From positions 41,354,001 through 41,418,000 of the forward strand of contig CM068744.1 of NCBI GenBank assembly GCA_035084275.1: a stretch of DNA of 64,000 nucleotides, given 5' to 3'. Both the position numbers and the translations under genes were made by a program. Under the pieces are notes generated by a model, which saw only the letters and a program-made list of their open reading frames with translations, had not been told where the DNA came from and did not search any database. This stretch comes from Hydrolagus colliei (taxonomy: Eukaryota). Shown here piece after piece: positions 9,182 through 61,282 of this stretch (positions are counted from its first letter, which is position 1; every line of letters starts with the position of its first letter).

Positions 9182-11266
9182 ATGAGTGCATCTAACACAG
9201 TGTCTGTGATCGACAACACCTTCAAGAAGATCTCCAAGGCTGATGATATCAGAAAAGACACTGAATTAATGATGAAGCCCTACAGCAACTGGGAAGAGTT
9301 CCTGATGCCAGGGCCCATCTCTGTGTCTATTTTAGGTGAATTGATATTCATTTCAGCAAGCGATGACTTTCCCATCAATCAGAATATGCCCAAAGGTGGC
9401 TACACGTACATCAAATACCCCCAGTCTTTCCGTGCTTGTCTGGTGCAAGTCAGCAACCAAGGGTGGGAGGCATTCAACACAGCTCACAAGAACATGGATG
9501 AGATACGGCTTCACACTTTGACCACTCCAACCCATATTAAGAATGCGGTGAAGATCCTAATGCGATCAAGTAAAGGCACAAGCAGCGCACTGCTTCCTAA
9601 AGTACTGAGCAGCGTCAGCTCATCGGCAGAATCCTGCCTGAGTCTTGCAAAAGCCGTGGAGGACAAGTTTGTTTTGGTGATGGTTCTGATCAATGAGCTG
9701 TTGGAGGCCTGCACAAACTCTAAAGGAGCCCAACAGCAGGAACTAGAAGAGGTCAAATTGAAAATGCAAGAATACAAACTCAAAGAAGAGTCCGCAAAAT
9801 CACTGAAAGAAATGGCAGAGAATCAGGAGAAATTAATGAAGAAACAAATGGAACAATGCCAAGAAGATTACAAATCTGCACTTGATTCCATGCCCAGTGG
9901 TTGGGATGTTCTCGGAATGAATTTTGTTGACGGATTATTGACTACTGTCAACACTTTTGTTGCTGCAATACCATCCTTTGTAGGCTTCGAATTACCCTCT
10001 ACTGACAAACCAACAGAAACCCCCACACAGCCCTCTGCAGATGCCTCATTACAGTCACTCAAGATAGTGAGCAAAGGCAACCAGGTCTTCAATTGGGTTA
10101 CTTTACTTGAAAAGTTTGTGACCGAAGATCAGAAAATCAACATGAAACTTGTGATTGACCAGAAAACTGGGAACTTGAATTCAGACTGGGGGAAGAATCA
10201 ACTACTCAAACTGAAAACTGAATTTGAACAGGAGGAAGAGAGTCTGCCCAAACAGAGGGCCTTGGCAGTGATCAACGAGGCTATTTCAGTTTATAATGAG
10301 TTTCATGAGCTGCAGAAGAACCCAGATGATGAGACGGTGATGAGCGAGATCGTCACAAAGATAAGCCCTGTCTGTGACAATGCGCGTGAATTTAGCTCCT
10401 ACTGCAATGCAGTGAGTAACACATCTGGGTTAAACATCAATCCGCCACAGATGGCAAACGCAGGCAATGAAGAGATCACTGGTCAGGGTAATGCTGGTAC
10501 TATTGCTATAAAAAACGCCAGATTCAAAGTTGAACAGACGACAGCGATGTTACAGAACTCACAGAAAATGTATGAAAAGAGTTTCGAGAACTTGACGAAA
10601 AGCAATAAGGAACTAGTAGAAATCTTGGCCGGGATGAGGAAGTGCGAACTGAAGGAACTCGACTTTGACAAAACCATTCAGATCCTCATGAAAGGTCTTG
10701 ATGCCTTAGGGAAAGTCAAAGAGCAGTGGGGCAAGATGATTCGTTTCTTCCAGATGTTATCCAATCTGATTAAAATTTGTCTCCAATCTGTCAATAATTT
10801 TGTCTGCTACACCGAAGTGGCTGCAAAGCTTCCGGTATATTCTATGGACTCTTTAATGATAGATATGATCTATACACAAGCGTTTCAGGCTACTAACATC
10901 ATCAACGTGGTCCATATGATTTCCGAATCCTATGTACAAATATCTACTGAGTTCCTGATGGATCGAGTGAGTAGCTTGGGAAGACTGATTGCTTTGGATC
11001 CAACGAGAGATGGCACACGATTTGACTATGAACGTAAAAAGTTACACAGTGACTGTGACAAGGCTTCCAAAGGGATTCAGGAGCTCATACTTCGAAACAA
11101 GGCAGAGTTCGACAGGAATCTGGAGAGCAGAGTGAAGACAATCACTGAAAACCTGGAGGCCGTGCTCCCTCCTGTGTCTGCAGAAGAGAAAAGGATGATT
11201 GAATACACAGTGCATCACGGAATGGACGCAGCGACCAAAGACATGATAGATGACATTGATATTTAA
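9182..11266 (+). CDS. Single-coding-exon 694-aa alpha-helical/coiled-coil protein of uncharacterised family; possible ClyA/HBL-like alpha-pore-forming protein
   Basis: Uninterrupted 2.1-kb ORF with no TE motifs. Splice acceptor ttatttacag (AG 9161-9162) just before ATG 9182 (MSASNTVS...). Heptad-like E/K/Q-rich stretches, a hydrophobic segment GWDVLGMNFVDGLLTTVNTFVAAIPSFVGF, no signal peptide. The CDS is well supported; the product call is inference. Confidence 0.85.
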   Translation: MSASNTVSVIDNTFKKISKADDIRKDTELMMKPYSNWEEFLMPGPISVSILGELIFISASDDFPINQNMPKGGYTYIKYPQSFRACLVQVSNQGWEAFNTAHKNMDEIRLHTLTTPTHIKNAVKILMRSSKGTSSALLPKVLSSVSSSAESCLSLAKAVEDKFVLVMVLINELLEACTNSKGAQQQELEEVKLKMQEYKLKEESAKSLKEMAENQEKLMKKQMEQCQEDYKSALDSMPSGWDVLGMNFVDGLLTTVNTFVAAIPSFVGFELPSTDKPTETPTQPSADASLQSLKIVSKGNQVFNWVTLLEKFVTEDQKINMKLVIDQKTGNLNSDWGKNQLLKLKTEFEQEEESLPKQRALAVINEAISVYNEFHELQKNPDDETVMSEIVTKISPVCDNAREFSSYCNAVSNTSGLNINPPQMANAGNEEITGQGNAGTIAIKNARFKVEQTTAMLQNSQKMYEKSFENLTKSNKELVEILAGMRKCELKELDFDKTIQILMKGLDALGKVKEQWGKMIRFFQMLSNLIKICLQSVNNFVCYTEVAAKLPVYSMDSLMIDMIYTQAFQATNIINVVHMISESYVQISTEFLMDRVSSLGRLIALDPTRDGTRFDYERKKLHSDCDKASKGIQELILRNKAEFDRNLESRVKTITENLEAVLPPVSAEEKRMIEYTVHHGMDAATKDMIDDIDI

Positions 11267-14209
11267 AGATAATGGATTACAGGTAATAATAATCTTACAC
11301 ATTAATATGAAGCCTTTCACATCAGGAGGACTACTCAAAGTGCTTCACTGGATTCAATCACATAATAGTATTAATATTTCCAAGTGATATAGCACACTTC
11401 TTGTTTTCTAGACTTCTCAAAGTGCTTCACAGTATATACTGTAAACTGAATTGATTGTATGTTTGTGAGTGAAACACGGCAGCCAATTGGGCACAGCAGA
11501 CCAAATTATTATTATTTTTTCTTGAGGGATTATTATCAGGTGAGTGGAATAAAAAGACTTGCCCAAGGTTTCGACCTGCTAGGAATCAAACCCAGATTTT
11601 ACACTTGCAAGGCGAATGCCCTAACCACGGCAATACAACACACTAAAATGTAGCAAACAATCTACGATCCTACACCAGAGAAGGGAAATATATAATTTCC
11701 AGTTGTTATTTTAGTATTGAACATGGCAGTCAATTTGCACAGAGCAATATGTCAGAAACAGCCATGACGTTTTAGGCTCGTATGCCCCCAGCTCTGCATT
11801 GACACATCATGTAAACCCTCAACTTTAAACACCAGTGTATGGCTTCAACCTCAACCTACTGACCCAGAGGCCTGGGCATTACCAACTGAGACAGACCCAC
11901 CCAGGTACCGTACCCTCTTCATTCCAAAATGTTTATCTCTTCTTTGTTTTCATTGTTTCAGCTCCTTCGACTTCCAGCAAATGTTGCTAAGACAGAACCA
12001 TTGATGGAGAGAAGACTTCACCAGACAATTTTCTCTCTGAAAACTTCAGCCTTCCAATGGGATAAACACAGACGCAATTGTGACATGCTTACACATGTTG
12101 GGTGATTTGAGTAAAAAATCTCCTTATTCCAATTAATTAGTTAAAATTCTGCTATGCTGTCATCTTTCCCAGAATAACATTTGATGCAGAATCATTCATG
12201 ATACGACATCCTAAAGCACTTCACAAGATTGTCTGTTACCTCCAGTGACTATGCTTTTTAATAACCAATTTACATGCAGCAGTAAACAATAATTACCGTA
12301 AGCAAATGCCTTTTATTCAGGGTTTGTTGGCTGGGTGAATCCCCCTTGTGCCATAGGACCTTTGATGCTAGCATTGTACTCTTCCCAGGCTACTGAAACA
12401 TCAGCCCATTCTGTGAGCTCAAAGTCACAACATGGGATACAAACCCACAACTTGCTGACTCACACATAAGTGCTGCCACCTGAGCCCAGCTGATACCAAT
12501 GTGCTAGTAGGCGCCAGTGCTTGTGACCTTCTGTCCATTGGCTAATTTATCATAAATATAATTTTTCGTTGTTGTTTCACTGAAGAGCTGGCCCATTCTC
12601 ACTGAGTGGCAATCAGGGGCAGGTGATTAGTATCTATCCCTGGATCACTGCACACTCACTGCAAAGGAACAGATCAATCACTGAAAGGTTTACAGCATCT
12701 TCTCTCTATGGTTCAGTCACTGCTCATGTTAGAAGGAGCTAGAGAAGGGAACCTGATGCTAATCCATCACTTAGTCAGGCCCACATCTCATGCTTTCACT
12801 ATTAGAACTTTCACATATGCTTTTCATATTAGAAACAAACAATCGCTTCAGCATTAAATTATATTAGCAAATAATAGATAACCAGAGTAACTGGTGGTGG
12901 GACATAGACATCAAGTGGCTTCTGCAGATAGCTCATCATTCAGCCTCCATTTCTTTCCATCTCTCTATCTTCGTGTCTTTCTGTCTCTATCTTCCCATAG
13001 CTGTATCTGATATCGTCTTTGACTCTTCATAGTCCAGTTCCTCAGCCAGTCAGCTCCACAGTATGCCAGCTCACTGCTATTTGGAGCAGCAAAACATTCA
13101 CTGAGAGCTGGGATTCTTCACACTCAGTTTCTGATAACCCTGCATGTCAAAGACCTAGCAGCGTTAAGCTGGTTACACCAATGCACACTCTGACTTCCCC
13201 AAGCCTTGGCTTTTGCTAACGTGAGCCTAGAACTCTCCGAAATAAGGTGAGCAGAATGTATCCCTCCAAGCAGATTACACACATTCCATTCCAAGTTTAG
13301 CTGAAACTCTCAGTCTGATTTGGATACTTTTAAGCATAGTGATGGATTTCCGAGTGTGTTTACCTCGGTTGCAACAAATATGTCACTCTGTGTAATTGTA
13401 TTGTACCCTTTATCTCTTTCCAATTTTCTCTCTGTATCCGTCTGTGCTTCCATAAACCATACTCCTTCTCCCTCTCAGTATTGTACTCACTTTCCCTCCC
13501 TTCTTCTGACTATTTCTCTTTCTCTCAGGTTTGAAGGAAGATGTATCTTCAGAAGCTGAGGTATTAACTCATAGAATGGGAAATTGAATCAAGAATTGTG
13601 GCCATATATTGCTAAGAGATCATGGTGAATAGAAGGAAAAGGGTCAGAAAGAGTAGCTGCAGTGGAGGAACTCACACCAACACATGCTGAATGGCCTCCT
13701 CCTGTGCTATAATGTCTATGATTCCAGGGTGGGTAATGTAGTGATGTGAAGCTTTTGAAACTAATGCTCTGCCTACCAGTAATGTATGAGATGTTATTGA
13801 GTATGAAATGAACAAACAAATGTGCTTTTAGATGATTGTCTGAGCTGTTGCAAGGCAAGATATAGGCTGATGGATCAGGACATATGGTGTCCGCTAGCAT
13901 TGGAGCCTGTGACCTGTTACCTCTCTGACTATAGTCATTCAATAAACTGCTGTCACTATACCACTGTGTCCACTCACTGTCATTCTCTATTCTGCTGTGT
14001 TTATGCTCATACTCACCCACAGTAAATTCCGTACCCCATCACACCAGTTCCAATCAAGCTCCACTCGATCTCCATCACCAAGATCCATACACTCATTTTC
14101 AAACCCCTTCATACCATGGCATATCCCTATCCCTCTTACCCATCTACCCCCCAACTGGCTGCCACTACTCAACAGCCTGTGTCCCTCATATGCTCCATTC
14201 CACCAGTCC

Positions 14210-18359: not shown

Positions 18360-19306
18360 TCACTTCCTTGAGTCCAAAATCGAGAGAATCCGCTCTGTGG
18401 TTTCCTCCCCCCATCTTTCCTCCACCTCCGCCCCTCCATCCGCTATTCCAACCACCACCCACCCCCCCTTTCATACTTTCATCCCCACCTCCCCGTCTTC
18501 AGTCACAAAAATAATCACTTCCATGAAACCCACCACGTGTTCACTGGACCCCATCCCCACTCCTCCACACCCAAATCCACCTCCTGGCCCCACTCATCTC
18601 TGACACCATCACCTTTCCTTCTCCTCAGGCACCATCCCTACCTCCCTTAAAACAGCCACCATCACCCCTATCCTGAAAAAACCCTCCCTTGATGCATTGC
18701 AGCCATCAAGCTACCGACCCATCTCCAACCTCCTGTTCCTTTCTAAGGTCCATCAAAGAGTGGCTGCCTCCCAGCTCTGCTCCTTCCTTTCAACTCACTC
18801 ACTCCTTGAACCCCTCCAATCAGGTTTCTGCCCTGCTCACAGCACGGAAACTGCCCTGGTCAAGGTTACAAACGACATCCTAACCACCTGCGACCAGGGC
18901 TCCCTCTGCCTCTTCGTCCTCCTTGACCTGTCTGCTGCGTTCGACACAGTCGATCACACCATCCTCCTCCAACGTCTTTTCTCCCACTTCAACCTTCAAT
19001 GCACAGTCCTTGACTGGTTCCATTCCTACCTGACCCACCGCCTACATTTTGTATCTTCTAATGGTTTCTCCTCAATGGCGTCCCCCAGGGCTCTGCCCTC
19101 CTTTTCACCATTTACACGCTCCTTCCTCCCCCACATCCGTGCCTTGACCGGCACTGCTTATTTCCACCTGCGCAACATTGCCAGGCTCCGCAACTATCTC
19201 ACCCCACACGCTGCATAAACACTCGTGTACGTGTACAACACCTCACAGCTGGACAACGGAAACTCTCTCCTCGTCAGCCTCCCCAGCACCTCCATTCACA
19301 GGCTCG
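18360..19306 (+). mobile_element. L2 LINE RT fragment, truncated where the duplicated block begins
   Basis: YRPISNLLFLSKV..QSGFCPAHSTETALVKVTND..LLDLSAAFDTVDH (RT motifs). Switches abruptly to CR1 sequence at 19307. Confidence 0.9.
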
Positions 19307-20710
19307 GGGACAAGATAGACCTTCACTTTGAAAGATATAGGCTAATAAAGGATTGCCAGCATAGATTTGTTAAAGGCAAATTTTGCCTTACAAATCTGAT
19401 AGAATTTATCGGTGAGGTAACGGAATGGGTAGACGGGGGTAGCGCAGTTCATGTAGTTTACATGGACTTTCAAACAGCATTTGACAAAGTGCCGCATAGG
19501 AGGCTTATTAGGAAAGTAGAGGTCCACGGCGTTAAAGGGACAGTGGCAGCGTGGATCCACAACTGGCTGTGAGACAGAAAGCAGAGAGTTGTGGTGAGTG
19601 ACTGTTTTTCAGACTGGAGGGTAGTGTGCAGGGGCATCCCCCAGCGATCAGTTTTGGGACCATTGCTCTTTTTCACATCCTCCCGATATGAAATGAGCTA
19701 TATAAGTGCAATTTTGTTGTTGTTGTTTTTGATATATATTAAAAAGAAAAACAATATATAGATATACTATATATATTAACTATCTAGACTTGGGTATAGG
19801 GAGCACAGTTTCCAAGTTTGCAGATGATACTAAGTTAGGGAGAATAGTAAATAGTGAGGAGGATAGTAACCATCTGCAAGAAGATATAGATAAAATGGTA
19901 AAGTGGCCAGACACATGGCAGATGAAGTTTAATGCAGAGAAGTGTGAGGTTAGATAGGTTAGACAGTACAATTTTAAGGGGTGTGCGGGAACAGAGAGAT
20001 CTGGGGATTTGTGTTAGTGATTCTTTGAAGGTGGCAGGACAGGTAGACAAAGCCGTTAAGAAGGCATATGGGATAATAGGATTTATACATAGGGGTATAG
20101 AGTACAAACGTCAGGAAGTGCTGACTAACCTCTATAAAACTTTGGTTAGGCCTCAGCTGGAGTACTGTGTACAATTCTAGTCACCACACTATAGAAAGGA
20201 TGTTAAGGCATTGGAAAGGGTGCAAAGAAAGTTTACTAGAATGGTACCAGGATTGAGGGTCTTCAGTTAAGGGGAAAGGCTAGATAGGCTAGGTTTATTC
20301 TCTTTGGAAAAGAGAAGGTTGAGAGGAGAACTGACAGAGGTTTATAAAATCACAAGGGGATTCGACAGTGTGAATAAGGAAACACTATTTCCACTGGTGG
20401 GCAAATCTGTGATTCATGATCACAGATTTAAAATAGTTTTGAAACGAAGCAGAGGGAAGCTGAGGAGAATTTTTTTCACTCAGCGGGTTGTTCGAATCTG
20501 GAATGCAGTGCCTGAAAAGGTGGTGGAGGCCAATTCGATAACCGCTTTTAAAAGAGAATTAGATCTTTATTTAGGGAGAACAAGTCTGTTAGGTTATGGG
20601 GAGAGAGCTGGGCAGTGGGATTGAGTTGCTCTTTCCAAAGAGCCGGCACACACTAGATGGGCTGAATGGCCTCCTTTTGTGCCATAAAATTCTATGATTC
20701 TATGATTCAA
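19307..20710 (+). mobile_element. CR1 LINE RT-to-3' fragment
   Basis: KGKFCLTNLIEF, VYMDFQTAFDKVPH, LVRPQLEYCVQF, RRLRGELTEVYKI; 3'UTR ending attctatgattctatga. Confidence 0.9.
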
Positions 20711-23586
20711 TGAATACTAGCTCCACAAAGAAAAAGCCCAATATTATCCATCTCCCACAAATGATACCAATGGTGTGGCTCATATAGTGTTCTACAGTCA
20801 ATTCACTTTACAGTATATTCTGTGAAGCGCTTTGAGACGTCTAGAAGAGGTGAAAAGCGCTATATCAAATGTAAGGACTATTAATATTGTTTCCTTGGAA
20901 GCTAAATTGCCACATATACAGCTAGTGTTGGAGTAACGACACAATGCTACGCACACAGAGAAAGATAAAGAGTTTCTTTGTGTTAGGCTATCAATCTTAT
21001 CAACGTTCTCTGGAATGGGTGATACTGGGATGTAATAAAGTGTTTAAGATAAATGAAGTCAAATTCCATCTGGACTCAAATCAGACAAGTAACTGTAATT
21101 CTCCAATCTTTTTGAAAGTTCACTAAGGACATCCACACCTTAAACTGTTCTTGGATTTCAATGCCCTGCAACATTGTTTCCTGGGGGAGTGGAAACAAGC
21201 TGTAGAGTTCTGAATAATCTGAATAGAAGACCAATCAGTAGGGAGATAGCGTAACTGAGCCTGGTTGTAATGAATAAGTATGGGAATGAGTGTCTCAGTA
21301 GCTTGAGGGGAGGCAGTGGCTGAACGATTAAATGTGTAGCTACCAGGAACACCCAGATCACCATCTGATGGTTTCTGCCCTGCCCATAGTACAGAGACTG
21401 CGCTTGTCAAAGTCACAAATTCACATCCCCTCTATCTGTGACCAGGGTTCCCACTGCCTCCTTATCCTGGACATCCCCACTGCTTTCGACAAGTCGATCA
21501 AGCCATCCTCCTCCACCGCCTGTCCTACGTCATCCAACTCAGTGGGACCGCACTCGCCTGGTTCGAGTCCTACCTCACAAACCGCCAGCAGTACATCTCC
21601 ACAAACCGCTCTCACCCGGTTGTACTCGAAGGCTCCATCCTTGGCCCCCTCTTCTTCCTGATCTATATGCTCCCTCTTAGGCATGTCATCCGCAGACATG
21701 GAGCACACTTCCACATGTATGCAGATGACAACAAACTCTATTTTTCCACCTCACTTTGCTACCCCCAGCCCATGATATACTGTCCATACTCTTTGGCTCT
21801 CGTCAGTGTCTTCAATCACACGGTTCCCACCTCCTCCTCCACCTGACCAACCCCTAAAACTCTCCGAACCCGTATGCCATTAGGTGTCAGGTTCAACCCC
21901 CGATTATACTTCCTCCATGGGGTCCGCTTCCACATGTATGCGGTGAACAACAAACTCTATTTTTCCCCCTCACTTTGCAACCCCCAGTCCCCGATGTACG
22001 GTCAGCCTGCCTGCTAGACATCGAGGGCTGGATGAGCGCAAATTTCCTTCAGCTAAATTTTGACAAGATGGAAGCTAAACTCTTTGGTTCTGTCTTGTCA
22101 AAATTTAGACACACAGTTCCCACCTCCTCCACCCACCTAGCCTGCCCCTAAAATTCTCCCAACCTGTCCACCATTTGGGCGTCAGGTTCAACCCCCAATT
22201 ATCCTTCCTCCCCCACATCCGGTCCCTCACCAGCACTACCTTCTTCCATCTCCGACGCATCGCCCGTCGCCACCAATATCTCACCCCAAAACTTGCCAAA
22301 ACCCTTGTCCATGCCTTTATCACCTCTCAGCTAGATTATTCAAATGCCCTCTTTGCCGGTCTCCCCTCCATTTCCGTTCATAAAATTCAGCTCATACAGA
22401 ACTCCACTGTATAATTCTCACCCTTACCAAATTCCGCTCCCCGAATACACCAGTCCTTGCCAGACTGCACCAGCTCCCTGTCCCGGAGAGGATTGATTTC
22501 AAGATCCTCATGCTTGTATTTAAATATCTCCACTCCTCTGCACCCCCTACCTCTCTGACCTCTTCTCTCCTCACAACAGTACCCGTTACCTTCACTCCCC
22601 TGGGTCTTGCTTCTTCCATGTCCCCAGAATCCTCTGCTCCATTATCGGCAGCTGTGCTTCAGCCACTACACCCTGAGTCCCTGGAAATCCCTTCCCCTTG
22701 TCCCCTCCTTTCCTATTTTAAGGTCTCAGCTAAAGACCTTTATTTTCTACCGCGCTTTCGATCACCTTCTTCCCCCTCCCCCTCAGCTCCGCCCCGCAAT
22801 CCGTTATTGTGAAGCACTCTGAGATGCCGTCCAGCATGGAGGGCACTATATAAATCTAAGTTGTTGTTGTTGTTTTTCTGCATAGTGTGGTTAATATCAA
22901 CTCCTCCCTTTCTATGCCTTGTGATCTCTGACCATCATACAGGTTTTCCAGGGGTATTAATCCAATCCCCCCCAAATTAAAAAAATTATAATGATTTGGT
23001 GACTCAATCCACTGCTACTTATGGAGTCAATGTGTGCATTTGGCTGCTGTATTTCACCCACGTAATAAACAGTTGATTTACTTTATAATATATCCTTTAA
23101 AGTGCTTTGATATATTTGAAGATGTAATAAGATGAAAAAGCAAGGATTATTATTATATTTCAGCACCATTGAGATAAAGGCTAAAATCCCATTCAACTTT
23201 CTGATATATTCTCCTACTTATGGTAATTGCCTCCTTCATGGCCTATCTCAAGTTCCTCCTCTTCCACCATGCATTTTGTCTCCCTACTTCACACACACAC
23301 TTGCCCTCCAACCGTCCTGATCCCAACCTACATCGTGAGTGCACATCCTGAATCTTCATGCCCTTGGGACTTCTTCCTGTAGTGAAAGCCACTATCCAAA
23401 TTTAATTTGATTTATTCCTAAATTCACAGATTTATAGAATCATAGAATTGTACACCAGAGAAACAGGCCACTCAGCCGATTATGTCTGTGCTGGAACTTT
23501 GAAAATAGGTGTCCCCATCCATCCCACTGCTGTACTCTCTTCCCATAGCGCTACAAACTGGTACTCCCCAAATAATTATCCCTCAG
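19307..23586 (+). repeat. Segmental duplication copy 1 (paralog of 34689-39075)
   Basis: Near-identical colinear sequence with the same CR1/SINE/L2 junctions and unique spacers. Starts gggacaag, ends aattatccctcag in both copies. Offset ~15.4 kb. Confidence 0.95.
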
Positions 23587-26964: not shown

Positions 26965-28005
26965 CTAGAGCTGGTCTGAGCTGTAATTGAGGGATATTTT
27001 ATTCCCATCAATGCAGCGCAGATTTGCCATCTCTCGTTTCATCTCACATCCCATCCACACCTCTATTTCGACAGGAATATCGTAGATAATCTCTTCTTGA
27101 AGAACTTGAATCTTCAGCCTGGTCATAGGGGGGACCTTGTTAGGGAGAGAGAGCTCCTGTTCGTGGGTCGTGGTCTTGGATTCTGAGGTGCCTTTTTCCA
27201 CTTGGAATCCTGTCTGAAGCTCTTTTTTCAGCTCAAGGCTCATACCAGCTTCGAAACCAAACATACCAAATGATGCTGACACATTAAAGGTGCTGCCAGT
27301 GGTGATTTGAGAGGATTCACTGAAGGTGAAATGCTGGGAGATGGTCACTTCCATACGGCTGTTCTTGGTGGTTGTGAACTGTTGCTCAGAGGCAGTTCGA
27401 TTTTCACAATGAAATTCATCAACTGGGTGTTCTTTTGAGATTTGCTTGCCTTCATCCCAAAGGATCGTCACCTTTTTAACCACGGGTTTCCCAGGCTTCA
27501 GAGGGCGAATGTGGGACATACGATCATGGAAATTAAAGGCACCATAATCATGACAATGTTCACCCTCTCTAGCCAACATTGTGCGCCCCTCGCAGTTTGG
27601 GTGTTGATAGAGCATCCAAACCCCACTCTGGACAATGTGGGAGGAAGCCTTGTCATTCATGTCACCACTAACTAGGTTGGTTTCTTGGGTGAATGATCTA
27701 GATAGTCCTTTATAATTGCCATGTTCATAAAGAGTTATGCGAGGATTCGCCAGGTTCTCTTGGATCAGTTTCATAGACGAGATCACATCATTGAACTCCC
27801 TGATAAAATTATAACGCCCTTCCTCATACACTCGGACAGTTCCACGGTAGAACTGATGTTCATACACGGCCCAGGGTTGGCCAAATACCTCCAAGCATGA
27901 GATAACATTGTCAAAGCTCAGTGCAACCAGATCAGGGACATCTTCAGTGAACTCGTGGGAAAGTCCTGTAAAATTAGGATGCTGATAGACAACAAGTTTG
28001 TTCAT
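26965..28005 (-). CDS. Beta/gamma-crystallin-domain aerolysin-like pore-forming protein (ep37/EDSP / betagamma-CAT alpha-subunit-like), 346 aa, intronless CDS
   Basis: Four Greek-key signatures (YQHPNFTG, YEHQFYRG, YEHGNYKG, YQHPNCEG) make two crystallin domains. The C-terminal ~170 aa is Ser/Thr-rich with an alternating amphipathic hairpin (FTFSESSQITTGSTFNVSASFGMFGFEAGMSLEL) and VPPMTRLKI, typical of aerolysin/ETX-MTX2 folds. A at -3 of the ATG. Confidence 0.88.
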   Translation of the reverse strand: MNKLVVYQHPNFTGLSHEFTEDVPDLVALSFDNVISCLEVFGQPWAVYEHQFYRGTVRVYEEGRYNFIREFNDVISSMKLIQENLANPRITLYEHGNYKGLSRSFTQETNLVSGDMNDKASSHIVQSGVWMLYQHPNCEGRTMLAREGEHCHDYGAFNFHDRMSHIRPLKPGKPVVKKVTILWDEGKQISKEHPVDEFHCENRTASEQQFTTTKNSRMEVTISQHFTFSESSQITTGSTFNVSASFGMFGFEAGMSLELKKELQTGFQVEKGTSESKTTTHEQELSLPNKVPPMTRLKIQVLQEEIIYDIPVEIEVWMGCEMKREMANLRCIDGNKISLNYSSDQL

Positions 28006-33049: not shown

Positions 33050-36000
33050 GGTGAATTCTGTCTTGGAGTGCTTGTATGTAAATGCACAGAGTTTGACAAA
33101 TAAAATTGGTGAGCTGCAGGCTCTAGTTGCTGCAAGGGAATATGATGTGGTAGCAATAACAGACACCTGGCTCAAACAAGGACAGGAATGGGAACTCAAC
33201 ATTCCTGGCTATAGTATATTTAGGAGGGATAGAGAAGGGAGAAAAGAAGGTGGGGTGGCAATATTAGTTAAAGACTCAGTTACAGCCTTAGAAAGGAACG
33301 AGGTGGAAGAAGGCCAAAAAATCAAACCTACCTGGTTAGAGATAAGGAATAAAAAAGGAGCAGTTACATTGTTAGGGGTATGCTATAGACCACCAAATAG
33401 TGGGAAGGTGATAGAAGAGCAGATCTGCAAGCGGATTTCGGAAAGATGCAAAGCCAATAGAGTAGTGATAATGGGAGACTTCAATTATCCCAACATCGAC
33501 TGGCAGAAGAGTAGTGTAAAGGGAAAGGATGGAGAAGAATTCCTGAAATGTGTACAGGGCAAATTCCTTGATCAGTATGCTTCCAGTCCAACAAGGAAGG
33601 AAGCAGTGCTGGATCTAGTTTTGGGGAATGAGGTGGGGCAAGTACAACAGGTTTCTGTAGGTGAGCACCTAGGAAATAGCTATCACAATATCATTAGATG
33701 CAGAGTAATTATGGAAAGGTATGAGGACCACTCAAAGGTGATGACACTCAACTGGAAGAAGGCTAATTTCAGTGAGTTAAAACGGGACCTAGCCGAGGTG
33801 GACTGGAAAGAATGATTGGCAGGTAAAACAGCTAATGAGCAGTGGGCAGTCTTCAAGGAAGAGATAGTTTGGGCACAGGTCAAAAGCATTCCAACAAAGA
33901 TAAAATGTAGGGCATCCAAACCTCCCTGGATATCTAAGGCAATTAAGGTTAAAATAAAGCAAAAAATTGAGGCTTATGACAAGTGTCAGGCCCAAGATAC
34001 AGAGGTCAACCAAGCAGAATATAGGAACAGCAGGCGAGAAATGAAAAAGGAAATTAGAGGGGCAAAAAGACTACATGAGAAACAATTAGCAGGTAACATT
34101 AAAGGGAACCATAAGGTATTTTACAAACATATTAAGAGTAAAAGATTGGTCAAGGATAGAGTGGGGCCAATTAGGGGGCCAAGGAAGAAATCTTATTGTG
34201 GAGGCAGAGGGCATGGCTGATGTGCTAAATGAATACTTTGCCTCTGTCTTAACAAGAGGATGCAGCCAATGCTACAGTATTGGAGGAGAGGGTAGAACAA
34301 ATGGATAGGATTAGTATCAACAGAGAGAAAGTACTAAAAAGGTTGACGGCGCTCAAGGTAGATAAGTCACCCGGTCCAGATGGGATGCATCCTAGCTTAA
34401 TAAGGGAAGTACGGGAGCAAATAGCACCCAGGTAGCAAACCCATGTGGGGCCCATATGGGCATGGATAAACCCAAATTGGCCCATATGGGGCCTATATGG
34501 GCTTGCTACCTGGGCAGCGACTCCGGCCACAATCTTTCAATCTTCCTTGGACACAGGGGTGGTGCCAGAGGACTGGAAGGCTGCGAATATTACTCCCCTG
34601 TATAAAAAGGTGCAGAAGGACAAATCTGGGAACTACAGGCCAGTCAATCTAATGTTGGTAGTGGGCAAACTTCTAGAAGCTATAATCAGGGACAAGAAAG
34701 ACCTTCACTTTGAAAGATATAGGCTAATAAAGGATAGCCAGCATGAATTTGTTAAAGGCAAATCTTGCCTTACAAATCTGATAGAATTTTTCGATGAGGT
34801 AACGGAATGGGTGAACGAGGGTAGCGCAGTTCATGTTGTTTACATGGACTTTCAAAAGGCATTTGACAAAGTGCCGCATAGGAGGCTTATTAGGAAAGTA
34901 GAGGCCCATGGCATTAAAGGGACAGTGGCAGCGTGGATCCACAACTGGCTGCGAGACAGAAAGCAGAGAGTTGTGGTGAGTGGCTGTTTTTCAGACTGGA
35001 GGGTAGTGCGCAGGGGCATCCCCCAGGGATCGGTTTTGGGACCATTGCTCTTTTTATATAGCTCTTTTGAGCTATATAAGTGCAATTTTGTTGTTGTTGT
35101 TTTTAATATATATTAAAAAGGAAAACAATATATAGATATACTATATATATTAACAATCTAGACTTGGGTATAGGGAGCACAGTTCCCAAATTTGCAGATA
35201 ATACTAAGTTAGGGAGAATAGTAAATAGTGAGGAGGATAGTAACCATCTGCAAGAAGATATAGATAAAATGGTAAAGTGGCCAGACACATGGCAGATGAA
35301 GTTTAATACAGAGAAGTGTGAGGTTAGATAGGTTAGACAGTACAATTTTAAGGGGTGTGCGGGAACAGAGAGATCTGGGGATTTGTGTTAGTGATTCTTT
35401 GAAGGTGGCAGGACAGGTAGACAAAGCCGTTAAGAAGGCATATGGGATAATAGGATTTATAAATAGGGGTACAGAGTACAAAAGTCAGGAAGTGCTGACT
35501 AACCTCTATAAAACTTTGGTTAGGCCTCAGCTGGAGTACTGTGTACAATTCTAGTCACCACACTATAGAAAGGATGTTAAGGCATTGGAAAGGGTGCAAA
35601 GAAAGTTTACTAGAATGGTACCAGGATTGAGGGTCTTCAGTTAAGGAGAAAGGCTAGATAGGCTAGGTTTATTCTCTTTGGAACAGAGAAGGTTGAGAGG
35701 AGAACTAACAGAGGTTTATAAAATCACAAGGGGATTCGACAGTGTGAATAAGGAAAAACTATTTCCACTGGTGGGCAAATCTGTGATTCATGATCACAGA
35801 TTTAAAATAGTTTTGAAACGAAGCAGAGGGAAGCTGAGGAGAATTTTTTTCACTCAGCGGGTTGTTCGAATCTGGAATGCATTGCCTGAAAAGGTGGTGG
35901 AGGCCAATTCGATAACCGCTTTTAAAAGAGAATTAGATCTTTATTTAGGGAGAACAGGTCTATTAGATTATGGGGAGAGAGCTGGGCAGTGGGATTGAGT

Positions 36001-36085
36001 TGCTCTTTTCAAAGAGCCGGCACACACTAGATGGGCTGAATGGCCTCCTTTTGTGCCATAAAATTCTATGATTCTATGATTCAAT
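33050..36085 (+). mobile_element. Near-complete CR1 ORF2 (APE endonuclease + RT), frameshifted, with nested inserts
   Basis: CLYVNAQSLTNKIGEL, VAITDTW, GVCYRPP, IMGDFNYP, LDLVL (APE). [32 protein letters not shown] (RT). CR1 3'UTR and attctatg tail. Confidence 0.92.
34427..34514. mobile_element. 88-bp palindromic MITE, CCC...GGG termini, 2-bp CA TSD (CMC/EnSpm-like)
   Basis: atag-CA-CCCAGGTAGCA...TGCTACCTGGG-CA-gcgact. Perfect 11-bp TIR, interrupts the CR1 coding sequence. Confidence 0.8.
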
Positions 36086-39075
36086 GAATACTAGCTCCAC
36101 GAAAAAAAAAAGCCCAATATTATCCATCTCCCACAAATGATACCAATGGTGTGGCTCATATAGTGTTCTACAGTCAATTCACTTTACAGTATATTCTGTG
36201 AAGCGCTTTGAGACGTCTAGAAGAGGTGAAAAGCGCTATATCAAATGTAAGGACTATTAATATTGTTTCCTTGCAAGCGAAATTGCCACATATACAGCTA
36301 GTGTTGGGAGTAACGACACAATGCTACGCCCACAGAGAAAGATAAAGAGTTTCTTTGTGTTAGCTTATCAATCTTATCAATGTTCTCTGGAATGGGTGAT
36401 ACTGGGATGTAATAAAGTGTTTAAGATAAATGAAGTCAAATTCCATCTGGACTCAAATCAGACAAGTATCTGTAATTCTCCAATCTTTTTGAAAGTTCAC
36501 TAAGGACATCCACACCTTAAACTGTTCTTGGATTTCAATGCCCTGGAACATTGTTTCCTGGCTTCCTCTTTCCTCTCCCTCCAGTCATTCTAAGGAACCT
36601 TCTAGTTCGATTTACATGCTGCCCACAGTGCAGAAATACTATTACGGCTGGGATTGATGGGTTCAGGGAATCTAGTGGGGGAGTGGAAACAAGCTGTAGA
36701 GATCTTAATAATCTGAATAGAAGACCAATCAGTAGGGATATAGCGTAACTGAGCCTGGTTGTAATGAATAAGTATGGGAATGAGTGTCTCAGTAGCTTGA
36801 GGGGAGGCAGTGGCTGAACGATTAAATGTGTAGCTACCAAGAACATACAGATCACCATCTGATGGTTTCTGCCCTGCCCATAGTACAGAGACTGCGCTTG
36901 TCAAAGTCACAAATGACATCCCCTCTATCTGTGAACAGGGTTCCCACTGCCTCCTTGTCCTGGACATCCCCACTGCTTTCGACAAGTCGATCAAGCCATC
37001 CTCCTCCACCGCCTGTCCTCCGTCATCCACCTCAGTGGGACCGCACTCGCCTGGTTCGAGTCCTACCTCACAAACCGCCAGCAGTACATCTCCACAAACC
37101 GCTCTCACCCGGTTGTACTCGAAGGCTCCATCCTTGGCCCCCTCTTCTTCCTGATCTATATGCTCCCTCTATGGCATGTCATCCGCAGACATGGAGTACA
37201 CTTCCACATGTATGCAGATGACAACAAACTCTATTTTTCCACCTCACTTTGCAACACCCAGTCCCTGAAATACTGTCCATACTCTTTGGCTCTCGTCAAT
37301 GTCTTCAATCACACGGTTCCCACCTCCTCCTCCACCTGATCATCCCCTAAAACTCTCCGAACCCGTACGCCATTAGATGTCAGGTTCAACCCCCGATTAT
37401 ACTTCCTCCATGGGGTCCGCTTCCACATGTATGCGGTGAACAACAAATTCTATTTTCCCCCCTCACTTTGCAACCCCCAGTCCCCGATGTACGGTCAGCC
37501 TGCCTGCTAGATATCGAGGGCTGGATGAGCGCAAATTTCCTTCAGCTAAATTTTGACAAGATGGAAGCTAAACTCTTTGGTTCTGTCTTGTCAAAATTTA
37601 GACACACAGTTCCCACCTCCTCCACCCACCTAGCCTGCCCCTAAAATTCTCCAAACCTGAACGCCGTTTAGGCGTCAGGTTCAACCCCCAATTATCCTTC
37701 CTCCCCCACATCCGGTCCCTCACCAGCACTACCTTCTTCCATCTCCGACGCATCGCCCGTCGCCACCAATATCTCACCCCAAAACTTGCCAAAACCCTTG
37801 TCCATGCCTTTATCACCTCTCAGCTAGATTATTCAAATGCCCTCTTTGCCGGTCTCCCCTCTGCAACCGTTCATAAAATTCAGCTCATACAGAACTCCAC
37901 TGTATAATTCTCACCCTTACCAAATTCCGCTCCCCGAACACACCAGTCCTTGCCAGACTGCACCAGCTCCCTGTCCCGGAGAGGATTGATTTCAAGATTC
38001 TCCTGCTTGTATTTAAATACCTCCACTCCTCTGCACCCCCTACCTCTCTGACCTCTTCTCTCCTCACAATAAGTACCCGTTACCTTCACTCCCCCGGGTC
38101 TTGCTTCTTCCATGTCCCCAGAATCCTCTGCTCTATTATCGGCAGCTGTGCTTCAGCCACTACACCCTGAGTCCCTGGAAATCCCTTCCCCTTATCCCCT
38201 CCTTTCCTATTTTAAGGTCTCAGCTAAAGACCTTTCTTTTCTACCGCGCTTTCGATCACCTTCTTCCCCCTCCCGCTCAGCTCCGCCCCGCAATCCGTTA
38301 TTGTGAAGCGCTCTGAGACGCCGTTCAGCATGGAGGGCACTATATAAATCTAAGTTGTTGTTGTTGTTTTTCTTCATAGTGTGGTTAATATCAACTCCTC
38401 CCTTTCTATGCCTTGTGATCCGTGGCCATCATACAGGTTTTCCAGGGGTATTAATCCAATCCCCCCCAAATTAAAAAAATTATAATGATTTGGTGACTCA
38501 ACCCACTTCTATTTATGGATTCAATGTGTGCATTTGGCTGCTGTATTTCACCCACGTAATAAAAAGTTGATTTACTTTGTAATATATCCTTTGAAGTGCG
38601 TTGAAATACTTGAAGATGTAATAAGATGAAAAAGCAAGGATTATTATTATATTCCAGTACCATTGAGATAAAGGCTAAAATCCCATTCAACTTTTTGATA
38701 TATTCTCCTTCTTATGGTAATTGCCTCCTTCATGGCCTATCTCAAGTTCCTCCTCTTCCACCATGCATTTTGTCTCCCTACTTCACACACACACTTGCCC
38801 TCCAACCGTCCTGATCCCAACCTGCATTGTGGGTGCACATCCTGAATCTTCATGCCCTTGGGACTTCTTCAAGTAGTGAAAGCCACTATCCAAATTTAAT
38901 CTTTTCCTAAATTCACAGATTTATAGAATCATAGAATTGTACACCACAGAAACAGGCCACTCAGCCCATTACGTCTGTGCTGGAACTTCGAAAATAGTTG
39001 TCCCCATTCATCCCACTGCCGTACTCTCTTCCCATAGCGCTACAAACTGGTATTCCCCAAATAATTATCCCTCAG
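34689..39075 (+). repeat. Segmental duplication copy 2 (paralog of 19307-23586)
   Basis: Same order of CR1 3' end, SINE tail, unique spacer, L2 with an internal tandem duplication, and unique tail. Has ~125 bp (~36555-36677) that copy 1 lacks. Confidence 0.95.
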
Positions 39076-50331: not shown

Positions 50332-50383
50332 ATGGCCAGTGAGCTACTCACAGCTGTCACCCTGACCCTCTGCCTTGCTCTGG
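50332..50383 (+). CDS. Exon 1 (signal peptide) of multi-V-domain Ig-superfamily receptor
   Basis: MASELLTAVTLTLCLAL-G followed by G|gtaagt phase-1 donor, in frame with the acceptor at 55281 (G|GA ATA ATG). Confidence 0.8.
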
Positions 50384-52760: not shown

Positions 52761-52841
52761 TTTTAAAAAATTTTTTTAAAAGTGACCCATCAAGCAATAC
52801 TGATCTGAAGAAAAAATCTTGAATAAATAAGGGAGGGGAAA

Positions 52842-53755: not shown

Positions 53756-53764
53756 CACATGATT

Positions 53765-55280: not shown

Positions 55281-55610
55281 GAATAATGGGTCAGTCTCTA
55301 ATCCTGGTTCAGTCTCCAGAATTCAAACCAGCCCGAGAGGGTCAGACAGTGGAGCTTTGGTGTGGAGTGGAGAACAGCAAAGTGTCTGACATTGACCTAA
55401 AGTGGGAATATTTGGAAGTTAAAGGCCCTACCAAAACACTGCTGTTTGATGGATTCACAAGTGATGACCGTTTCAAGTCTACTAGAGATGTCTCCAGAAA
55501 CAGCTTCAATCTGACAATCACTAACGTGAAGCTTGTGGACTCTGGCTTCTATTACTGTCTTGTACATGATACAAACAGTAGAGGAACTGGGACCGAGCTC
55601 ATTGTTGTTG
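55281..55610 (+). CDS. Exon 2: V-set Ig domain 1 with germline-joined J-like segment
   Basis: Acceptor taatttgcag|, donor G|gtaagt (phase 1/1). VELWC, LKWEY, DSGFYYC, then RGTGTELIVV. No RSS. Confidence 0.9.
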
Positions 55611-55654
55611 GTAAGTAGACAACAGACAGGGCTCTGCACTGGGGAAAGAGAACT

Positions 55655-55770
55655 AGAGAGACAGAGAGAGAACCACAGAGAGAGAGAGAGAGAGAGAAAA
55701 CGAGAGAGAGACCCAGAGAGAGAGAACCTGAGAGAGACAAAGAGAGAAAGCAATAGAGACCCTGAGATAG
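55655..55770. repeat. Imperfect (GA)n microsatellite
   Basis: gagagacagagagagaaccacagagagagagagag... Confidence 0.85.
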
Positions 55771-58632: not shown

Positions 58633-58995
58633 GTTCACAAAGTCCATCAATTGTCCAGTCTCCAAAGTTGGTGAATATCAGAGAGGGAGGCACGGCCCAG
58701 TTACAGTGCACAATGGACAAGGTTGATGTGAGCCGCACCGATGTTCACTGGTACAGACAACACCTGAGACAGCGCAGGGAGTGGATTTTAACACATCGAT
58801 TAAATGACCAGATAACAGTCCCCACTGCAATGGTTCCACTCCAAGGTTCCACTCAGCATCTCCAGCCATCAAGAGTCACCTCCAATAAAACCTACATTCT
58901 GATACTCATTGACGTGTCAGTCAGTGACGCTGCCGTTTATCACTGCTGTGTGTGGTCAACGGTCTGCGGGGATGGGACACAGCTGAATGTAACTG
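58633..58995 (+). CDS. Exon 3: VJ-type Ig domain 2
   Basis: Acceptor tttttttaaag|, donor G|gtgagt (phase 1/1), 363 nt open. AQLQC, VHWYRQ, DAAVYHCC, VCGDGTQLNVT. Confidence 0.9.
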
Positions 58996-59757: not shown

Positions 59758-60120
59758 GTTCACAAAGTCCATCACTCGTCCAGTCTCTAAAGTTAGTAAA
59801 TTTCAGAGAGGGAGGCATGGCCCAGTTACAGTGCACTGTGGACAATGGCGATGTGAGCAGCATCGATGTTCACTGGTACCGACAATACCTGAGTCAGCGC
59901 AGGGAGTGGATTTTAACACATTGTGTAAATGACCAGATAATAGTCCCCACTGCAACATTTTCACTCCAAAATTCCACTCGGCGTCTCCAGCCATTCCGAG
60001 TCATTTCCAGTAACACCTACATACTGATACTCACTAAAGTATCAGTCAATGACACTGCTGTCTATCACTGCTGTGTGTGGTCAACTGTCTGTGCGAACGG
60101 AACACAACTGAACGTAACCA
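59758..60120 (+). CDS. Exon 4: VJ-type Ig domain 3 (duplicate of domain 2)
   Basis: Acceptor gtcttatag|, donor A|gtgagt (phase 1/1), 363 nt open. AQLQC, VHWYRQ, DTAVYHCC, VCANGTQLNVT. Confidence 0.9.
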
Positions 60121-61136: not shown

Positions 61137-61282
61137 AGCAGTCACTGAGAGATGTTCAGACGCCATATATTGCTGTGATCGTGGCAGTGTGCTGTCTGGC
61201 TCTTGTTTTTCTCTGCATCACTGTTATCGTTTACATGAAACAGTTGCTGTGTTTCAAAAAACAATCCAGAGAAAATGGGTAA
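61137..61282 (+). CDS. Exon 5: stalk + transmembrane + juxtamembrane segment
   Basis: Acceptor ccccacag| in phase 1. QSLRDVQTPYIAVIVAVCCLALVFLCITVIVYMKQLLCFKKQSRENG, then either TAA (61280-61282) or donor GG|gtaatt after 61278. Too short for the ORF track. Confidence 0.82.

What the first reader, a model, noticed from the sequence alone, without database searches (positions are those of the whole stretch)
9182..61282. Possible innate-immune cluster: candidate alpha-PFT, aerolysin-type beta-PFT and a germline VJ receptor within 52 kb
Seen: the only three intact host genes in the window are a putative helical pore-former, a crystallin-aerolysin fusion and a non-rearranging triple-VJ receptor, set among duplications of different ages. 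Established: amphibian betagamma-CAT needs a separate partner subunit (a trefoil factor) for targeting, and ClyA-family toxins are often multi-component. Inference: these could be a linked sensor/effector module under birth-and-death evolution. Linkage alone does not show shared function.
Basis: inference. Interest (0 to 1): 0.7.

Follow-up and report, generated by a model that had tools for sequence, protein, structure and literature searches.

The report
Three linked fast-evolving fish defence-type genes
In a transposon-rich stretch of a chimaera-like fish genome sit three real but unrelated genes (an uncharacterised all-helical protein, a crystallin-aerolysin pore-former and a three-V-domain surface receptor); their neighbourhood is only loosely conserved in relatives, and nothing shows that they work together.

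Summary
Gene 1 (9182-11266, +) is an intronless 694-aa all-helical protein with no signal peptide. It belongs to a large unnamed family found in cartilaginous fishes, basal ray-fins, reptiles, corals and abalone. The "alpha-pore-former" label is not supported: there is no Pfam, NCBIfam or PDB sequence match and no significant fold match. Gene 2 (26965-28005, -) is a clear two-crystallin-domain plus aerolysin-type protein, the counterpart of Callorhinchus "epidermal differentiation-specific protein-like". Gene 3 (leader 50332, V exons 55281, 58633 and 59758, TM exon ending 61278, +) is a non-rearranging receptor with three V domains. Each V domain carries a J-like strand. Its shark relatives carry ITIM/ITSM tails; no tail exon was found in the window. 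Linkage is loose. In Callorhinchus the helical and aerolysin-type genes lie about 115 kb apart. Helical and receptor genes share a chromosome in eight sharks and lie 1.5 Mb apart in the basking shark. The three families differ in which animal groups carry them, and no trefoil partner is present. The best reading is that three unrelated multigene families sit together in a duplication-prone region that lies near a chromosome end in relatives. A sensor/effector module is not demonstrated. Interest is moderate to low.

The parts
9182..11266 (+). Intronless CDS of a 694-aa all-alpha protein with no signal peptide; member of a large uncharacterised metazoan family
   Evidence: ORF. It is 73% identical to Callorhinchus LOC121848591, and 110 homologues were found. 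A profile search gave 1826 cluster representatives. AF2 model is all-helical with pLDDT 71. dN/dS against Callorhinchus is 0.44.
26965..28005 (-). Single-exon CDS of a 346-aa protein with two beta/gamma-crystallin domains and a C-terminal aerolysin-type domain (EDSP/ep37-like, comparable to the betagamma-CAT alpha subunit)
   Evidence: Pfam Crystall 8.6e-29. PDB crystallins and 6lh8. 70-71% identity to Callorhinchus EDSP-like proteins. Homologues hit Pfam Aerolysin and ETX_MTX2. dN/dS 0.51.
50332..50383 (+). Inferred leader (signal-peptide) exon of the receptor gene, phase-1 GTAAGT donor
   Evidence: Hydrophobic peptide MASELLTAVTLTLCLAL followed by a donor. Weak matches to residues 1-18 of three Pristiophorus receptor homologues, 67% identity, E about 0.15.
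55281..55610 (+). V exon 1 (VJ-type V-set domain, ...YYC...RGTGTELIVVG)
   Evidence: AG acceptor and GT donor, phase 1. Best PDB sequence matches are antibody light-chain V regions, 3e-14.
58633..58995 (+). V exon 2 (VJ-type V-set domain, ...YHCC...CGDGTQLNVTG)
   Evidence: Pfam V-set 1.7e-08. Splice sites. PDB matches to VH, VHH and TCR-gamma V regions run through the J strand.
59758..60120 (+). V exon 3, tandem duplicate of V exon 2 (73% aa identity, dS about 0.31)
61137..61278 (+). Transmembrane exon (…IAVIVAVCCLALVFLCITVIVY…KKQSRENG), no charged TM residue; cytoplasmic exons not found in the window
   Evidence: Matches the TM regions of shark homologues P0146 (E 0.005) and P0121 (E 0.011).
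19304..23586 (.). Copy A of a 4.3-kb direct duplication (about 96% identity) flanking the aerolysin-type gene
   Evidence: self-megablast
34686..39075 (.). Copy B of the 4.3-kb direct duplication
   Evidence: self-megablast

Best explanation
The window is a transposon-rich piece of a holocephalan (chimaera-type) chromosome. It carries one member each of three unrelated, fast-evolving multigene families. They lie together because the region is duplication-prone; in relatives the same families sit close to a chromosome end. No working unit is shown.

Gene 2 most likely acts like other vertebrate aerolysin-like proteins. The two beta/gamma-crystallin domains bind a target, and the C-terminal domain oligomerises and inserts an amphipathic Ser/Thr-flanked loop as a beta-barrel pore. 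The family assignment is shown; the mechanism is inferred.

Gene 3 most likely encodes a type I membrane receptor. Its three germline-joined, Ig/TCR-like V domains bind ligand. Its tail, encoded beyond the window, probably signals through ITIM/ITSM motifs as in its shark relatives. The domains are shown; the signalling is inferred.

Gene 1 encodes a protein with no signal peptide, so it is probably cytosolic (inferred). The model shows long helical hairpins with two conserved, moderately hydrophobic segments. My best guess is a membrane-associating or oligomerising helical protein. This is inference with low confidence. Pore formation is not shown.
For: Reality and constraint:
- The ORFs are intact, and dN/dS against Callorhinchus is 0.44 (helical) and 0.51 (aerolysin-type).

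Identity:
- Crystallin and aerolysin domains.
- V-set domains whose best PDB sequence matches are antibody and TCR V regions, aligned through the J strand.
- Shark homologues have three V domains, a TM segment and ITIM/ITSM-like tails such as SEYADV, TEYAAI, LIYENV and SVYSEI.

Multigene character:
- At least three aerolysin-type copies lie on one Callorhinchus chromosome, two of them identical.
- Many helical paralogues occur per species.
- Many receptor paralogues occur per shark chromosome.
- V2/V3 and a 4.3-kb 96% duplication lie in the window.

Loose synteny only:
- Callorhinchus MU249834.1 has the helical gene at 1.425 Mb and aerolysin-type genes at 1.31, 1.24 and 0.46 Mb of 99 Mb.
- Cetorhinus has a helical gene at 113.71 Mb and a receptor at 115.25 Mb of 116.08 Mb.
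- Scyliorhinus canicula has a helical gene at 307.87 of 313.57 Mb.
- None of the eight fetched loci (a gene plus 10 kb either side) holds two of the families.

Different phyletic ranges:
- The helical family occurs in reptiles, corals, abalone and rays.
- The receptor family was found essentially only in sharks and chimaeras.
- The aerolysin-type search returned chimaera, turtle and caecilian hits but no elasmobranch.

Other:
- No trefoil motif in any of the six frames.
- The rest of the window is transposon-derived.
Against: - The proximity of helical and receptor genes recurs in both chondrichthyan subclasses: 44 kb here, and the same chromosome in eight sharks. The helical and aerolysin-type pair recurs in a second chimaera. 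Selection for linkage therefore cannot be excluded.
- A predicted Lates calcarifer protein (P0220) joins stonustoxin-type domains to the N-terminal part of the helical family. This hints at an association with pore-formers, or it may be a merged gene model.
- ClyA-family toxins are over-represented among the non-significant Foldseek hits of the full-length model.
- No expression data could be examined.
Confidence: 0.68

Rival explanations
1. One reading: the three genes form a selected sensor/effector module. The VJ receptor (or the helical protein) would target or regulate one or two pore-forming effectors, as the trefoil factor does for amphibian betagamma-CAT.
For: - The three genes lie within 52 kb here.
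- In Callorhinchus the helical and aerolysin-type genes are about 115 kb apart.
- Helical and receptor genes are on the same chromosome in Cetorhinus, two Scyliorhinus species, Carcharodon, Heptranchias, Heterodontus, Hemiscyllium and Chiloscyllium, judged by matching contig lengths. They are 1.5 Mb apart in Cetorhinus.
- betagamma-CAT is a complex of BmALP1 and BmTFF3 (abstract of PMC10206775, seen).
Against: - Shark chromosomes share ancestry, so the eight species amount to roughly one observation.
- Synteny at the 0.1-1.5 Mb scale needs no functional link.
- None of the eight fetched loci (a gene plus 10 kb either side) holds two of the families.
- The phyletic ranges differ.
- There is no trefoil motif.
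- The receptor's relatives are ITIM-type membrane receptors, not soluble subunits.
- Gene 1 and gene 2 are convergent and 15.7 kb apart. Gene 2 and the receptor leader are 22 kb apart across transposons. A shared promoter is therefore unlikely.
Confidence: 0.08
2. Gene 1 is a true ClyA/Hbl/Smh-type alpha-pore-forming protein: soluble long-helix bundles that unfold a hydrophobic head into the membrane.
For: - The model is all-alpha, with helices of 46-106 residues.
- The weak Foldseek list includes SmhA, SmhB pore (prob 0.92, TMt 0.45), ClyA, Hbl L1, AhlB and VCA0883.
- Conserved moderately hydrophobic segments lie at residues 40-58 and 243-271.
- Family members occur as tandem multi-copy genes.
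Against: - No Foldseek hit reaches E of 0.001 or better. The ClyA-family hits have E 0.16-0.84 and TMq of 0.22 or less, interleaved with catenin, vinculin and talin.
- The model of residues 1-436 gives F-BAR, talin, OspC and Vipp1 hits and no ClyA-family hit.
- No Pfam, NCBIfam or PDB sequence relationship was found, even with a 32-sequence profile.
- Hydropathy in the window protein reaches the transmembrane range (Kyte-Doolittle 19-mer of about 1.6) only marginally, with maxima of 1.64 and 1.67; the 243-271 segment stays below it (maximum 1.47).
- The 237-290 region is modelled with pLDDT below 50.
- There is no signal peptide.
Confidence: 0.12
3. The genes are decaying copies (pseudogenes), or the arrangement is an assembly artefact of a repeat-rich region.
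For: - The region is packed with LINE and hAT fragments and holds a 96% segmental duplication.
- The receptor lacks a detectable tail exon in the window.
Against: - Genes 1 and 2 have full-length open frames that align end to end with annotated Callorhinchus proteins, with dN/dS of about 0.44-0.51.
- All receptor exons are open, keep the canonical Cys/Trp/YxC residues and have consistent phase-1 splice sites.
- The window has no gaps.
Confidence: 0.05

Closest known systems
Vertebrate beta/gamma-crystallin-fused aerolysin-like proteins: newt/turtle 'epidermal differentiation-specific protein' (ep37/EDSP) and Bombina BmALP1, the alpha subunit of betagamma-CAT
   Same: Gene 2 has the same architecture: two crystallin domains followed by an aerolysin/ETX-MTX2-type domain of about 170 aa. 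It has no classical signal peptide. It is 44% identical to a turtle EDSP-like protein and 70-71% identical to Callorhinchus EDSP-like proteins.
   Different: It is a holocephalan member. No trefoil-factor partner is encoded nearby. Activity, partner and tissue are unknown.
Novel immune-type receptors (NITRs) of ray-finned fishes
   Same: Gene 3 has non-rearranging V domains with a contiguous J-like strand, is a type I membrane protein, and belongs to a multigene family. Relatives carry ITIM-type tails. The NITR description comes from PMC7916673.
   Different: It has three V domains in tandem rather than V alone or V plus I. It occurs in cartilaginous fishes, where the reviews I read report no NITRs (PMC6795676). 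Orthology to NITRs was not tested. The closest PDB sequences are antibody and TCR V regions.
ClyA-family alpha-pore-forming toxins (ClyA, Hbl/Nhe, Smh, Ahl)
   Same: Gene 1 is predicted to be built from very long helices. These toxins appear among its weak structural matches.
   Different: There is no significant structural or sequence similarity, and no convincing hydrophobic head. Gene 1 is twice the size (694 aa against roughly 300-370 aa), is of animal origin and has no signal peptide.
Rearranging Ig/TCR loci and germline-joined Ig genes of cartilaginous fishes
   Same: The V domains are of Ig/TCR type and include framework-4-like J strands.
   Different: V and J lie in one exon with no gap for recombination signals. 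There is no C domain. Three V domains sit in series with a TM exon.

Membership tests
beta/gamma-crystallin-fused aerolysin-like protein (EDSP/ep37/BmALP1 type) | Two N-terminal beta/gamma-crystallin domains (four Greek-key motifs) | tested here: met
   Pfam Crystall 8.6e-29 in two stretches. PDB beta/gamma-crystallins match down to 5.7e-21 over residues 2-170.
beta/gamma-crystallin-fused aerolysin-like protein (EDSP/ep37/BmALP1 type) | C-terminal aerolysin/ETX-MTX2-type pore-forming domain | tested here: met
   Residues 176-346 match PDB 6lh8 'aerolysin-like protein' at 5e-4; Cry23Aa1 and natterin-like protein are the next, weaker hits. Among the six aligned sequences, three hit Pfam Aerolysin and two hit ETX_MTX2 (best 4.3e-06).
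beta/gamma-crystallin-fused aerolysin-like protein (EDSP/ep37/BmALP1 type) | Works as a complex with a trefoil-factor subunit (betagamma-CAT) | tested here: not met
   No trefoil cysteine pattern was found in any of the six frames of the window. The rest of the genome could not be searched.
beta/gamma-crystallin-fused aerolysin-like protein (EDSP/ep37/BmALP1 type) | Oligomerisation and pore formation in membranes | not testable with these tools
   Needs recombinant protein and liposome or cell assays.
ClyA-family alpha-pore-forming toxins | Sequence membership (Pfam ClyA/HBL-type models or a PDB sequence match) | tested here: not met
   No such hit for the single protein, for the 32 members, or for the profile.
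ClyA-family alpha-pore-forming toxins | Significant structural similarity to the elongated helical bundle with a head domain | tested here: inconclusive
   The full-length model gives ClyA-family hits only at E 0.16-0.84 with TMq of 0.22 or less. The model of residues 1-436 gives none. Model pLDDT is only 71-72.
ClyA-family alpha-pore-forming toxins | Hydrophobic beta-tongue or hairpin able to span a membrane | tested here: inconclusive
   In the window protein the conserved segment at 40-58 reaches a Kyte-Doolittle 19-mer value of 1.64, a segment at 152-170 reaches 1.67 and the segment at 243-271 reaches 1.47; the 40-58 segment scores 1.4-1.9 in homologues. Residues 237-290 are modelled with pLDDT below 50.
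Novel immune-type receptors (NITR) | Non-rearranging V domain with a contiguous J-like motif | tested here: met
   All three V exons end in a GxGTxLxV-like strand before the donor site. PDB alignments run through FR4.
Novel immune-type receptors (NITR) | One V domain, or V plus an I-type domain | tested here: not met
   Three V-type domains lie in tandem, as in shark homologues.
Novel immune-type receptors (NITR) | Cytoplasmic ITIM, or a charged TM residue for adaptor pairing | tested here: inconclusive
   The TM exon has no charged residue, and no tail exon was found in the window. Shark homologues carry ITIM/ITSM-like motifs.
Novel immune-type receptors (NITR) | Phylogenetic grouping with ray-finned-fish NITR genes | not tested
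   No NITR sequences were fetched. The homologue search returned almost only chondrichthyan proteins.
Rearranging antigen-receptor genes (Ig/TCR) | Separate V and J segments flanked by recombination signals, plus C-domain exons | tested here: not met
   V and J are continuous within one exon, and the following exons are another V or the TM exon.

The most novel reading that the evidence does not exclude
The uncharacterised all-helical family (gene 1) could be a new, ancient class of animal membrane-active immune effectors. It has 1826 cluster representatives and is found from corals to reptiles. In cartilaginous fishes it would be kept, near a chromosome end, in one defence gene neighbourhood together with NITR-like VJ receptors and, in chimaeras, aerolysin-type pore-formers. 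This would make it a birth-and-death innate-immunity cluster predating the split of chimaeras and sharks.
Probability: 0.1. Interest if true: 0.75.

Novelty: new member of a known kind. Interest (0 to 1): 0.36.

Why it matters
If the loose linkage reflected function, it would point to a very old vertebrate arrangement that pairs germline V-type receptors with pore-forming effectors. It would also give a first functional handle on a large protein family that has no name.

As it stands, the useful results are three:
- Chimaeras carry EDSP/betagamma-CAT-type aerolysin proteins in several copies.
- Cartilaginous fishes have a sizeable family of NITR-like receptors with several VJ-type V domains and ITIM-type tails. 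The reviews I read report NITRs only from ray-finned fishes.
- The helical family is a well-conserved unknown that is worth a biochemical look.

Tried and rejected
Look-ups that gave nothing:
- P0111, P0003 and P0103 had no gene on record.
- For the S. canicula receptor genes P0148 and P0127, the gene ranges were too long and no coordinates were returned. The helical-receptor distance in catshark is therefore unknown.
- The only Callorhinchus receptor homologue with a genomic record found (P0155) lies on an unplaced 74-kb scaffold that carries no helical or aerolysin-type sequence.

Literature searches:
- 'zgc 162509', the zebrafish-derived name of the helical family, gave 0 papers.
- 'epidermal differentiation-specific protein' plus 'aerolysin' gave 0 papers.
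- Searches for NITR-like receptors in cartilaginous fishes found only statements that NITRs are known from ray-finned fishes.

Attempts to name gene 1:
- Pfam, NCBIfam, PDB sequence search, a PDB profile search and two AF2 models with Foldseek all gave nothing significant.
- Family members with N-terminal extensions had no Pfam domains, except one Lates model with stonustoxin, thioredoxin and FN3 domains.

Ideas rejected:
- An alternative leader directly upstream of V2. The apparent match to Callorhinchus P0172 reads through the intron's polypyrimidine tract, and the nearby ATG is out of frame.
- Reading the V exons as rearranging segments.

Full report
**What the window is.** The 64-kb window has no gaps. 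It is largely made of transposon debris. Apart from the three features discussed here, all 112 stop-to-stop ORFs of 95 aa or more match only reverse transcriptase (9 ORFs), LINE endonuclease, a hAT dimerisation domain and a ZCCHC3-type RNA-binding domain. That last domain lies in an ORF at 31313-31618, upstream of a LINE ORF2, and is probably LINE ORF1. The best protein matches of the host genes are to Callorhinchus milii at 70-73% identity with dS of about 0.35. The source is therefore a holocephalan other than Callorhinchus.

**Gene 1 (9182-11266, +).**
- It is a single open frame of 694 aa starting MSASNTV..., like its homologues.
- No family member has a signal peptide.
- The window protein's strongest hydrophobic 19-mers score 1.64 (within residues 40-58), 1.67 (152-170) and 1.47 (within 243-271). 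The 40-58 segment is the conserved hydrophobic maximum in most homologues, at 1.4-1.9.
- The word-based search found 110 homologues: many chondrichthyans, bichirs, sturgeon and paddlefish, eels, gymnotiforms, coelacanth, turtles, crocodilians, squamates, reef corals and an abalone. Almost all are called 'uncharacterized' or given spurious myosin or paramyosin names.
- A profile search of 1.84 billion representatives found 1826 members at E of 0.001 or better.
- Several species carry multiple paralogues on the same chromosome. This fits expansion by duplication, but their spacing was not measured.
- Pfam, NCBIfam and PDB sequence searches gave nothing, whether run with the protein, each of 32 members or the profile.
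- AlphaFold2 with a 32-sequence alignment gives an all-helical model (pLDDT 71) with helices of 46-106 residues. There are two low-confidence linkers, at 236-290 and 414-436.
- Foldseek against the PDB finds no match at E of 0.001 or better. The weak list is headed by an umbrella-toxin particle chain (E 6.7e-3, TM 0.14). It also contains several ClyA-family toxins (SmhA, SmhB, ClyA, Hbl L1, AhlB, VCA0883) at E 0.16-0.84 and TMq of 0.22 or less. These are interleaved with catenin, vinculin and talin bundles.
- A second model of residues 1-436 (pLDDT 72) gives only generic long-helix proteins (F-BAR, talin, OspC, Vipp1/PspA, apoE) and no ClyA-family hit.

The alpha-pore-former idea is therefore a possibility, not a finding. 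One teleost gene model (Lates calcarifer, P0220) joins stonustoxin-type, thioredoxin-like and FN3 domains to the N-terminal part of this family. It may be a true fusion or two neighbouring genes merged by the predictor.

**Gene 2 (26965-28005, -).**
- It is a single open frame of 346 aa.
- Residues 1-170 are two beta/gamma-crystallin domains (Pfam 8.6e-29; PDB crystallins to 5.7e-21).
- Residues 176-346 match the PDB entry named 'aerolysin-like protein' (6lh8, 5e-4). Cry23Aa1 and a natterin-like protein follow as weaker hits.
- Among the six aligned sequences, three reach Pfam Aerolysin and two reach ETX_MTX2.
- The alignment shows a Ser/Thr-rich stretch of alternating polarity (…SSQITTGSTFNVSASFGMFGFEAGMSLELKKELQTGFQVEKGTSESKTT…) where aerolysin-type proteins carry their membrane-insertion loop. 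I read this directly from the sequence.
- The closest relatives are Callorhinchus 'epidermal differentiation-specific protein-like' proteins (70-71%), then a turtle (44%) and a caecilian (38%). No shark or ray protein was returned.

This is the architecture of BmALP1, the pore-forming subunit of toad betagamma-CAT, which works with trefoil factor BmTFF3 (abstract of PMC10206775, seen). No trefoil cysteine pattern exists in any frame of the window.

**Gene 3 (50332-61278, +).**
- Three exons (55281-55610, 58633-58995, 59758-60120) each begin after an AG and end before a GT. Each is in phase 1 and encodes a complete V-set domain. The domains have the canonical Cys, Trp and YxC residues and end in RGTGTELIVVG, CGDGTQLNVTG and CANGTQLNVTS.
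- The best PDB sequence matches are antibody light-chain, VH/VHH and TCR-gamma V regions, aligned through framework 4. V and J are contiguous, so the gene does not rearrange.
- V2 and V3 are tandem duplicates (73% aa identity, dS 0.31). V1 is only about 30% identical to them.
- A TM exon (61137-61278) follows.
- A plausible leader exon lies at 50332-50383. Its peptide resembles the first 18 residues of three sawshark homologues. A LINE and a hAT fragment lie in the intron.
- No cytoplasmic exon was found before the window ends. The gene cannot be called complete.
- Homologues are numerous in sharks. NCBI names them SIRP-like, IgSF2/3-like or pIgR-like. They have three or more V domains, a TM segment and tails with ITIM/ITSM-like motifs.
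- Functionally the nearest described kind is the NITR family of ray-finned fishes. The reviews I could read describe NITRs as known from ray-finned fishes and not yet from cartilaginous fishes (PMC6795676 and PMC7916673).

**Linkage.** In Callorhinchus (MU249834.1, 99.09 Mb) the positions are as follows:

| Gene | Position | Strand |
|---|---|---|
| Helical orthologue | 1,424,972-1,427,065 | + |
| Aerolysin-type copy | 1,310,447-1,311,487 | - |
| Aerolysin-type copy | 1,240,402-1,241,442 | - |
| Aerolysin-type copy | 459,815-471,215 | + |

- The 1.31-Mb and 1.24-Mb copies are identical.
- The nearest helical/aerolysin-type pair is about 115 kb apart and divergent. In the window the pair is 16 kb apart and convergent.
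- The only Callorhinchus receptor homologue with a genomic record found (P0155) lies on an unplaced 74-kb scaffold.
- In eight sharks, helical and receptor homologues sit on contigs of identical length, which I take to mean the same chromosome.
- In the basking shark a receptor gene is at 115.25-115.27 Mb and a helical gene at 113.71 Mb of a 116.08-Mb chromosome.
- In the catshark a helical gene is at 307.87 of 313.57 Mb. Receptor coordinates could not be obtained.
- None of the eight fetched loci (a gene plus 10 kb either side) contains a member of another of the three families.
- In all three species with coordinates, the genes lie within about 2% of a chromosome or scaffold end.
- Shark karyotypes share ancestry, so the shark data amount to roughly one independent observation.

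**Weighing the module hypothesis.** Loosely conserved synteny at 0.1-1.5 Mb is common for unrelated genes.

Arguments against a dedicated module:
- The three families have different ranges. The helical family thrives in reptiles, corals and rays. Among batoids, the receptor search returned only one weak skate hit, and on a different chromosome.
- The aerolysin-type search returned no elasmobranch hit, although it reached a 38%-identical caecilian.
- The receptor's relatives look like inhibitory cell-surface receptors.
- The gene orientations and the transposon-filled spacers of 16 and 22 kb give no sign of shared regulation.

Arguments in favour:
- Proximity recurs in both chondrichthyan subclasses.
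- The Lates model joins the helical family to a pore-former family.

I put the module at about 8%. I put gene 1 being a true ClyA-type pore-former at about 12%.

**Verdict.** Two of the three labels are right. The third label is unsupported, and the functional inference is untested and somewhat disfavoured. The Callorhinchus counterparts of genes 1 and 2 are already annotated, though uncharacterised. The items are therefore new members of known kinds plus one conserved unknown.

Noticed in passing
window 19304-23586 and 34686-39075: A 4.3-kb direct segmental duplication at about 96% identity, made of a LINE 3' part plus adjoining sequence. The two copies are 15.4 kb apart and bracket the aerolysin-type gene. 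This arrangement could promote unequal crossing-over and copy-number change.
   Followed up: partly
window 31313-35113 (+): A LINE element. An ORF at 31313-31618 carrying a ZCCHC3-type RNA-binding domain looks like ORF1. An endonuclease plus reverse-transcriptase ORF2 is broken into three frames (32775-33812, 33816-34217, 34436-35113). A second 395-aa RT ORF at 51507-52694 lies in the receptor's first intron.
   Followed up: partly
window 52842-53696 (-): A hAT-family transposase C-terminal fragment (dimerisation domain) inside the intron between the inferred leader exon and V1 of the receptor.
   Followed up: no
L003 and L004 (Callorhinchus MU249834.1, 1.31 and 1.24 Mb): Two aerolysin-type genes 70 kb apart have identical coding sequences (dN = dS = 0). 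Either the duplication is very recent or the assembly duplicated the region.
   Followed up: no
Comparator positions: Callorhinchus 0.46-1.43 of 99.09 Mb; Cetorhinus 113.7-115.3 of 116.08 Mb; S. canicula 307.87 of 313.57 Mb: In all three species with coordinates, the families lie within about 2% of a chromosome or scaffold end. This suggests an end-proximal, duplication-prone neighbourhood.
   Followed up: partly
P0220 (Lates calcarifer XP_018518566.2, 987 aa): A predicted protein joins stonustoxin helical, thioredoxin-like SNTX and two FN3 domains to the first ~215 positions of the helical family. It is either a real fusion or two adjacent genes merged by the predictor.
   Followed up: partly
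P0102-P0110 (ENA/Logan proteins of 545-630 aa): Shorter relatives of the helical family (25-30% identity, lacking the first ~100 residues) come from unnamed metagenome or run assemblies, one on a 3-Mb contig. Their organisms are unknown.
   Followed up: partly
window 55620-56500: A GA/CT-rich low-complexity tract directly after V exon 1 produces long spurious Ser/Leu/Pro-rich ORFs on the minus strand.
   Followed up: no
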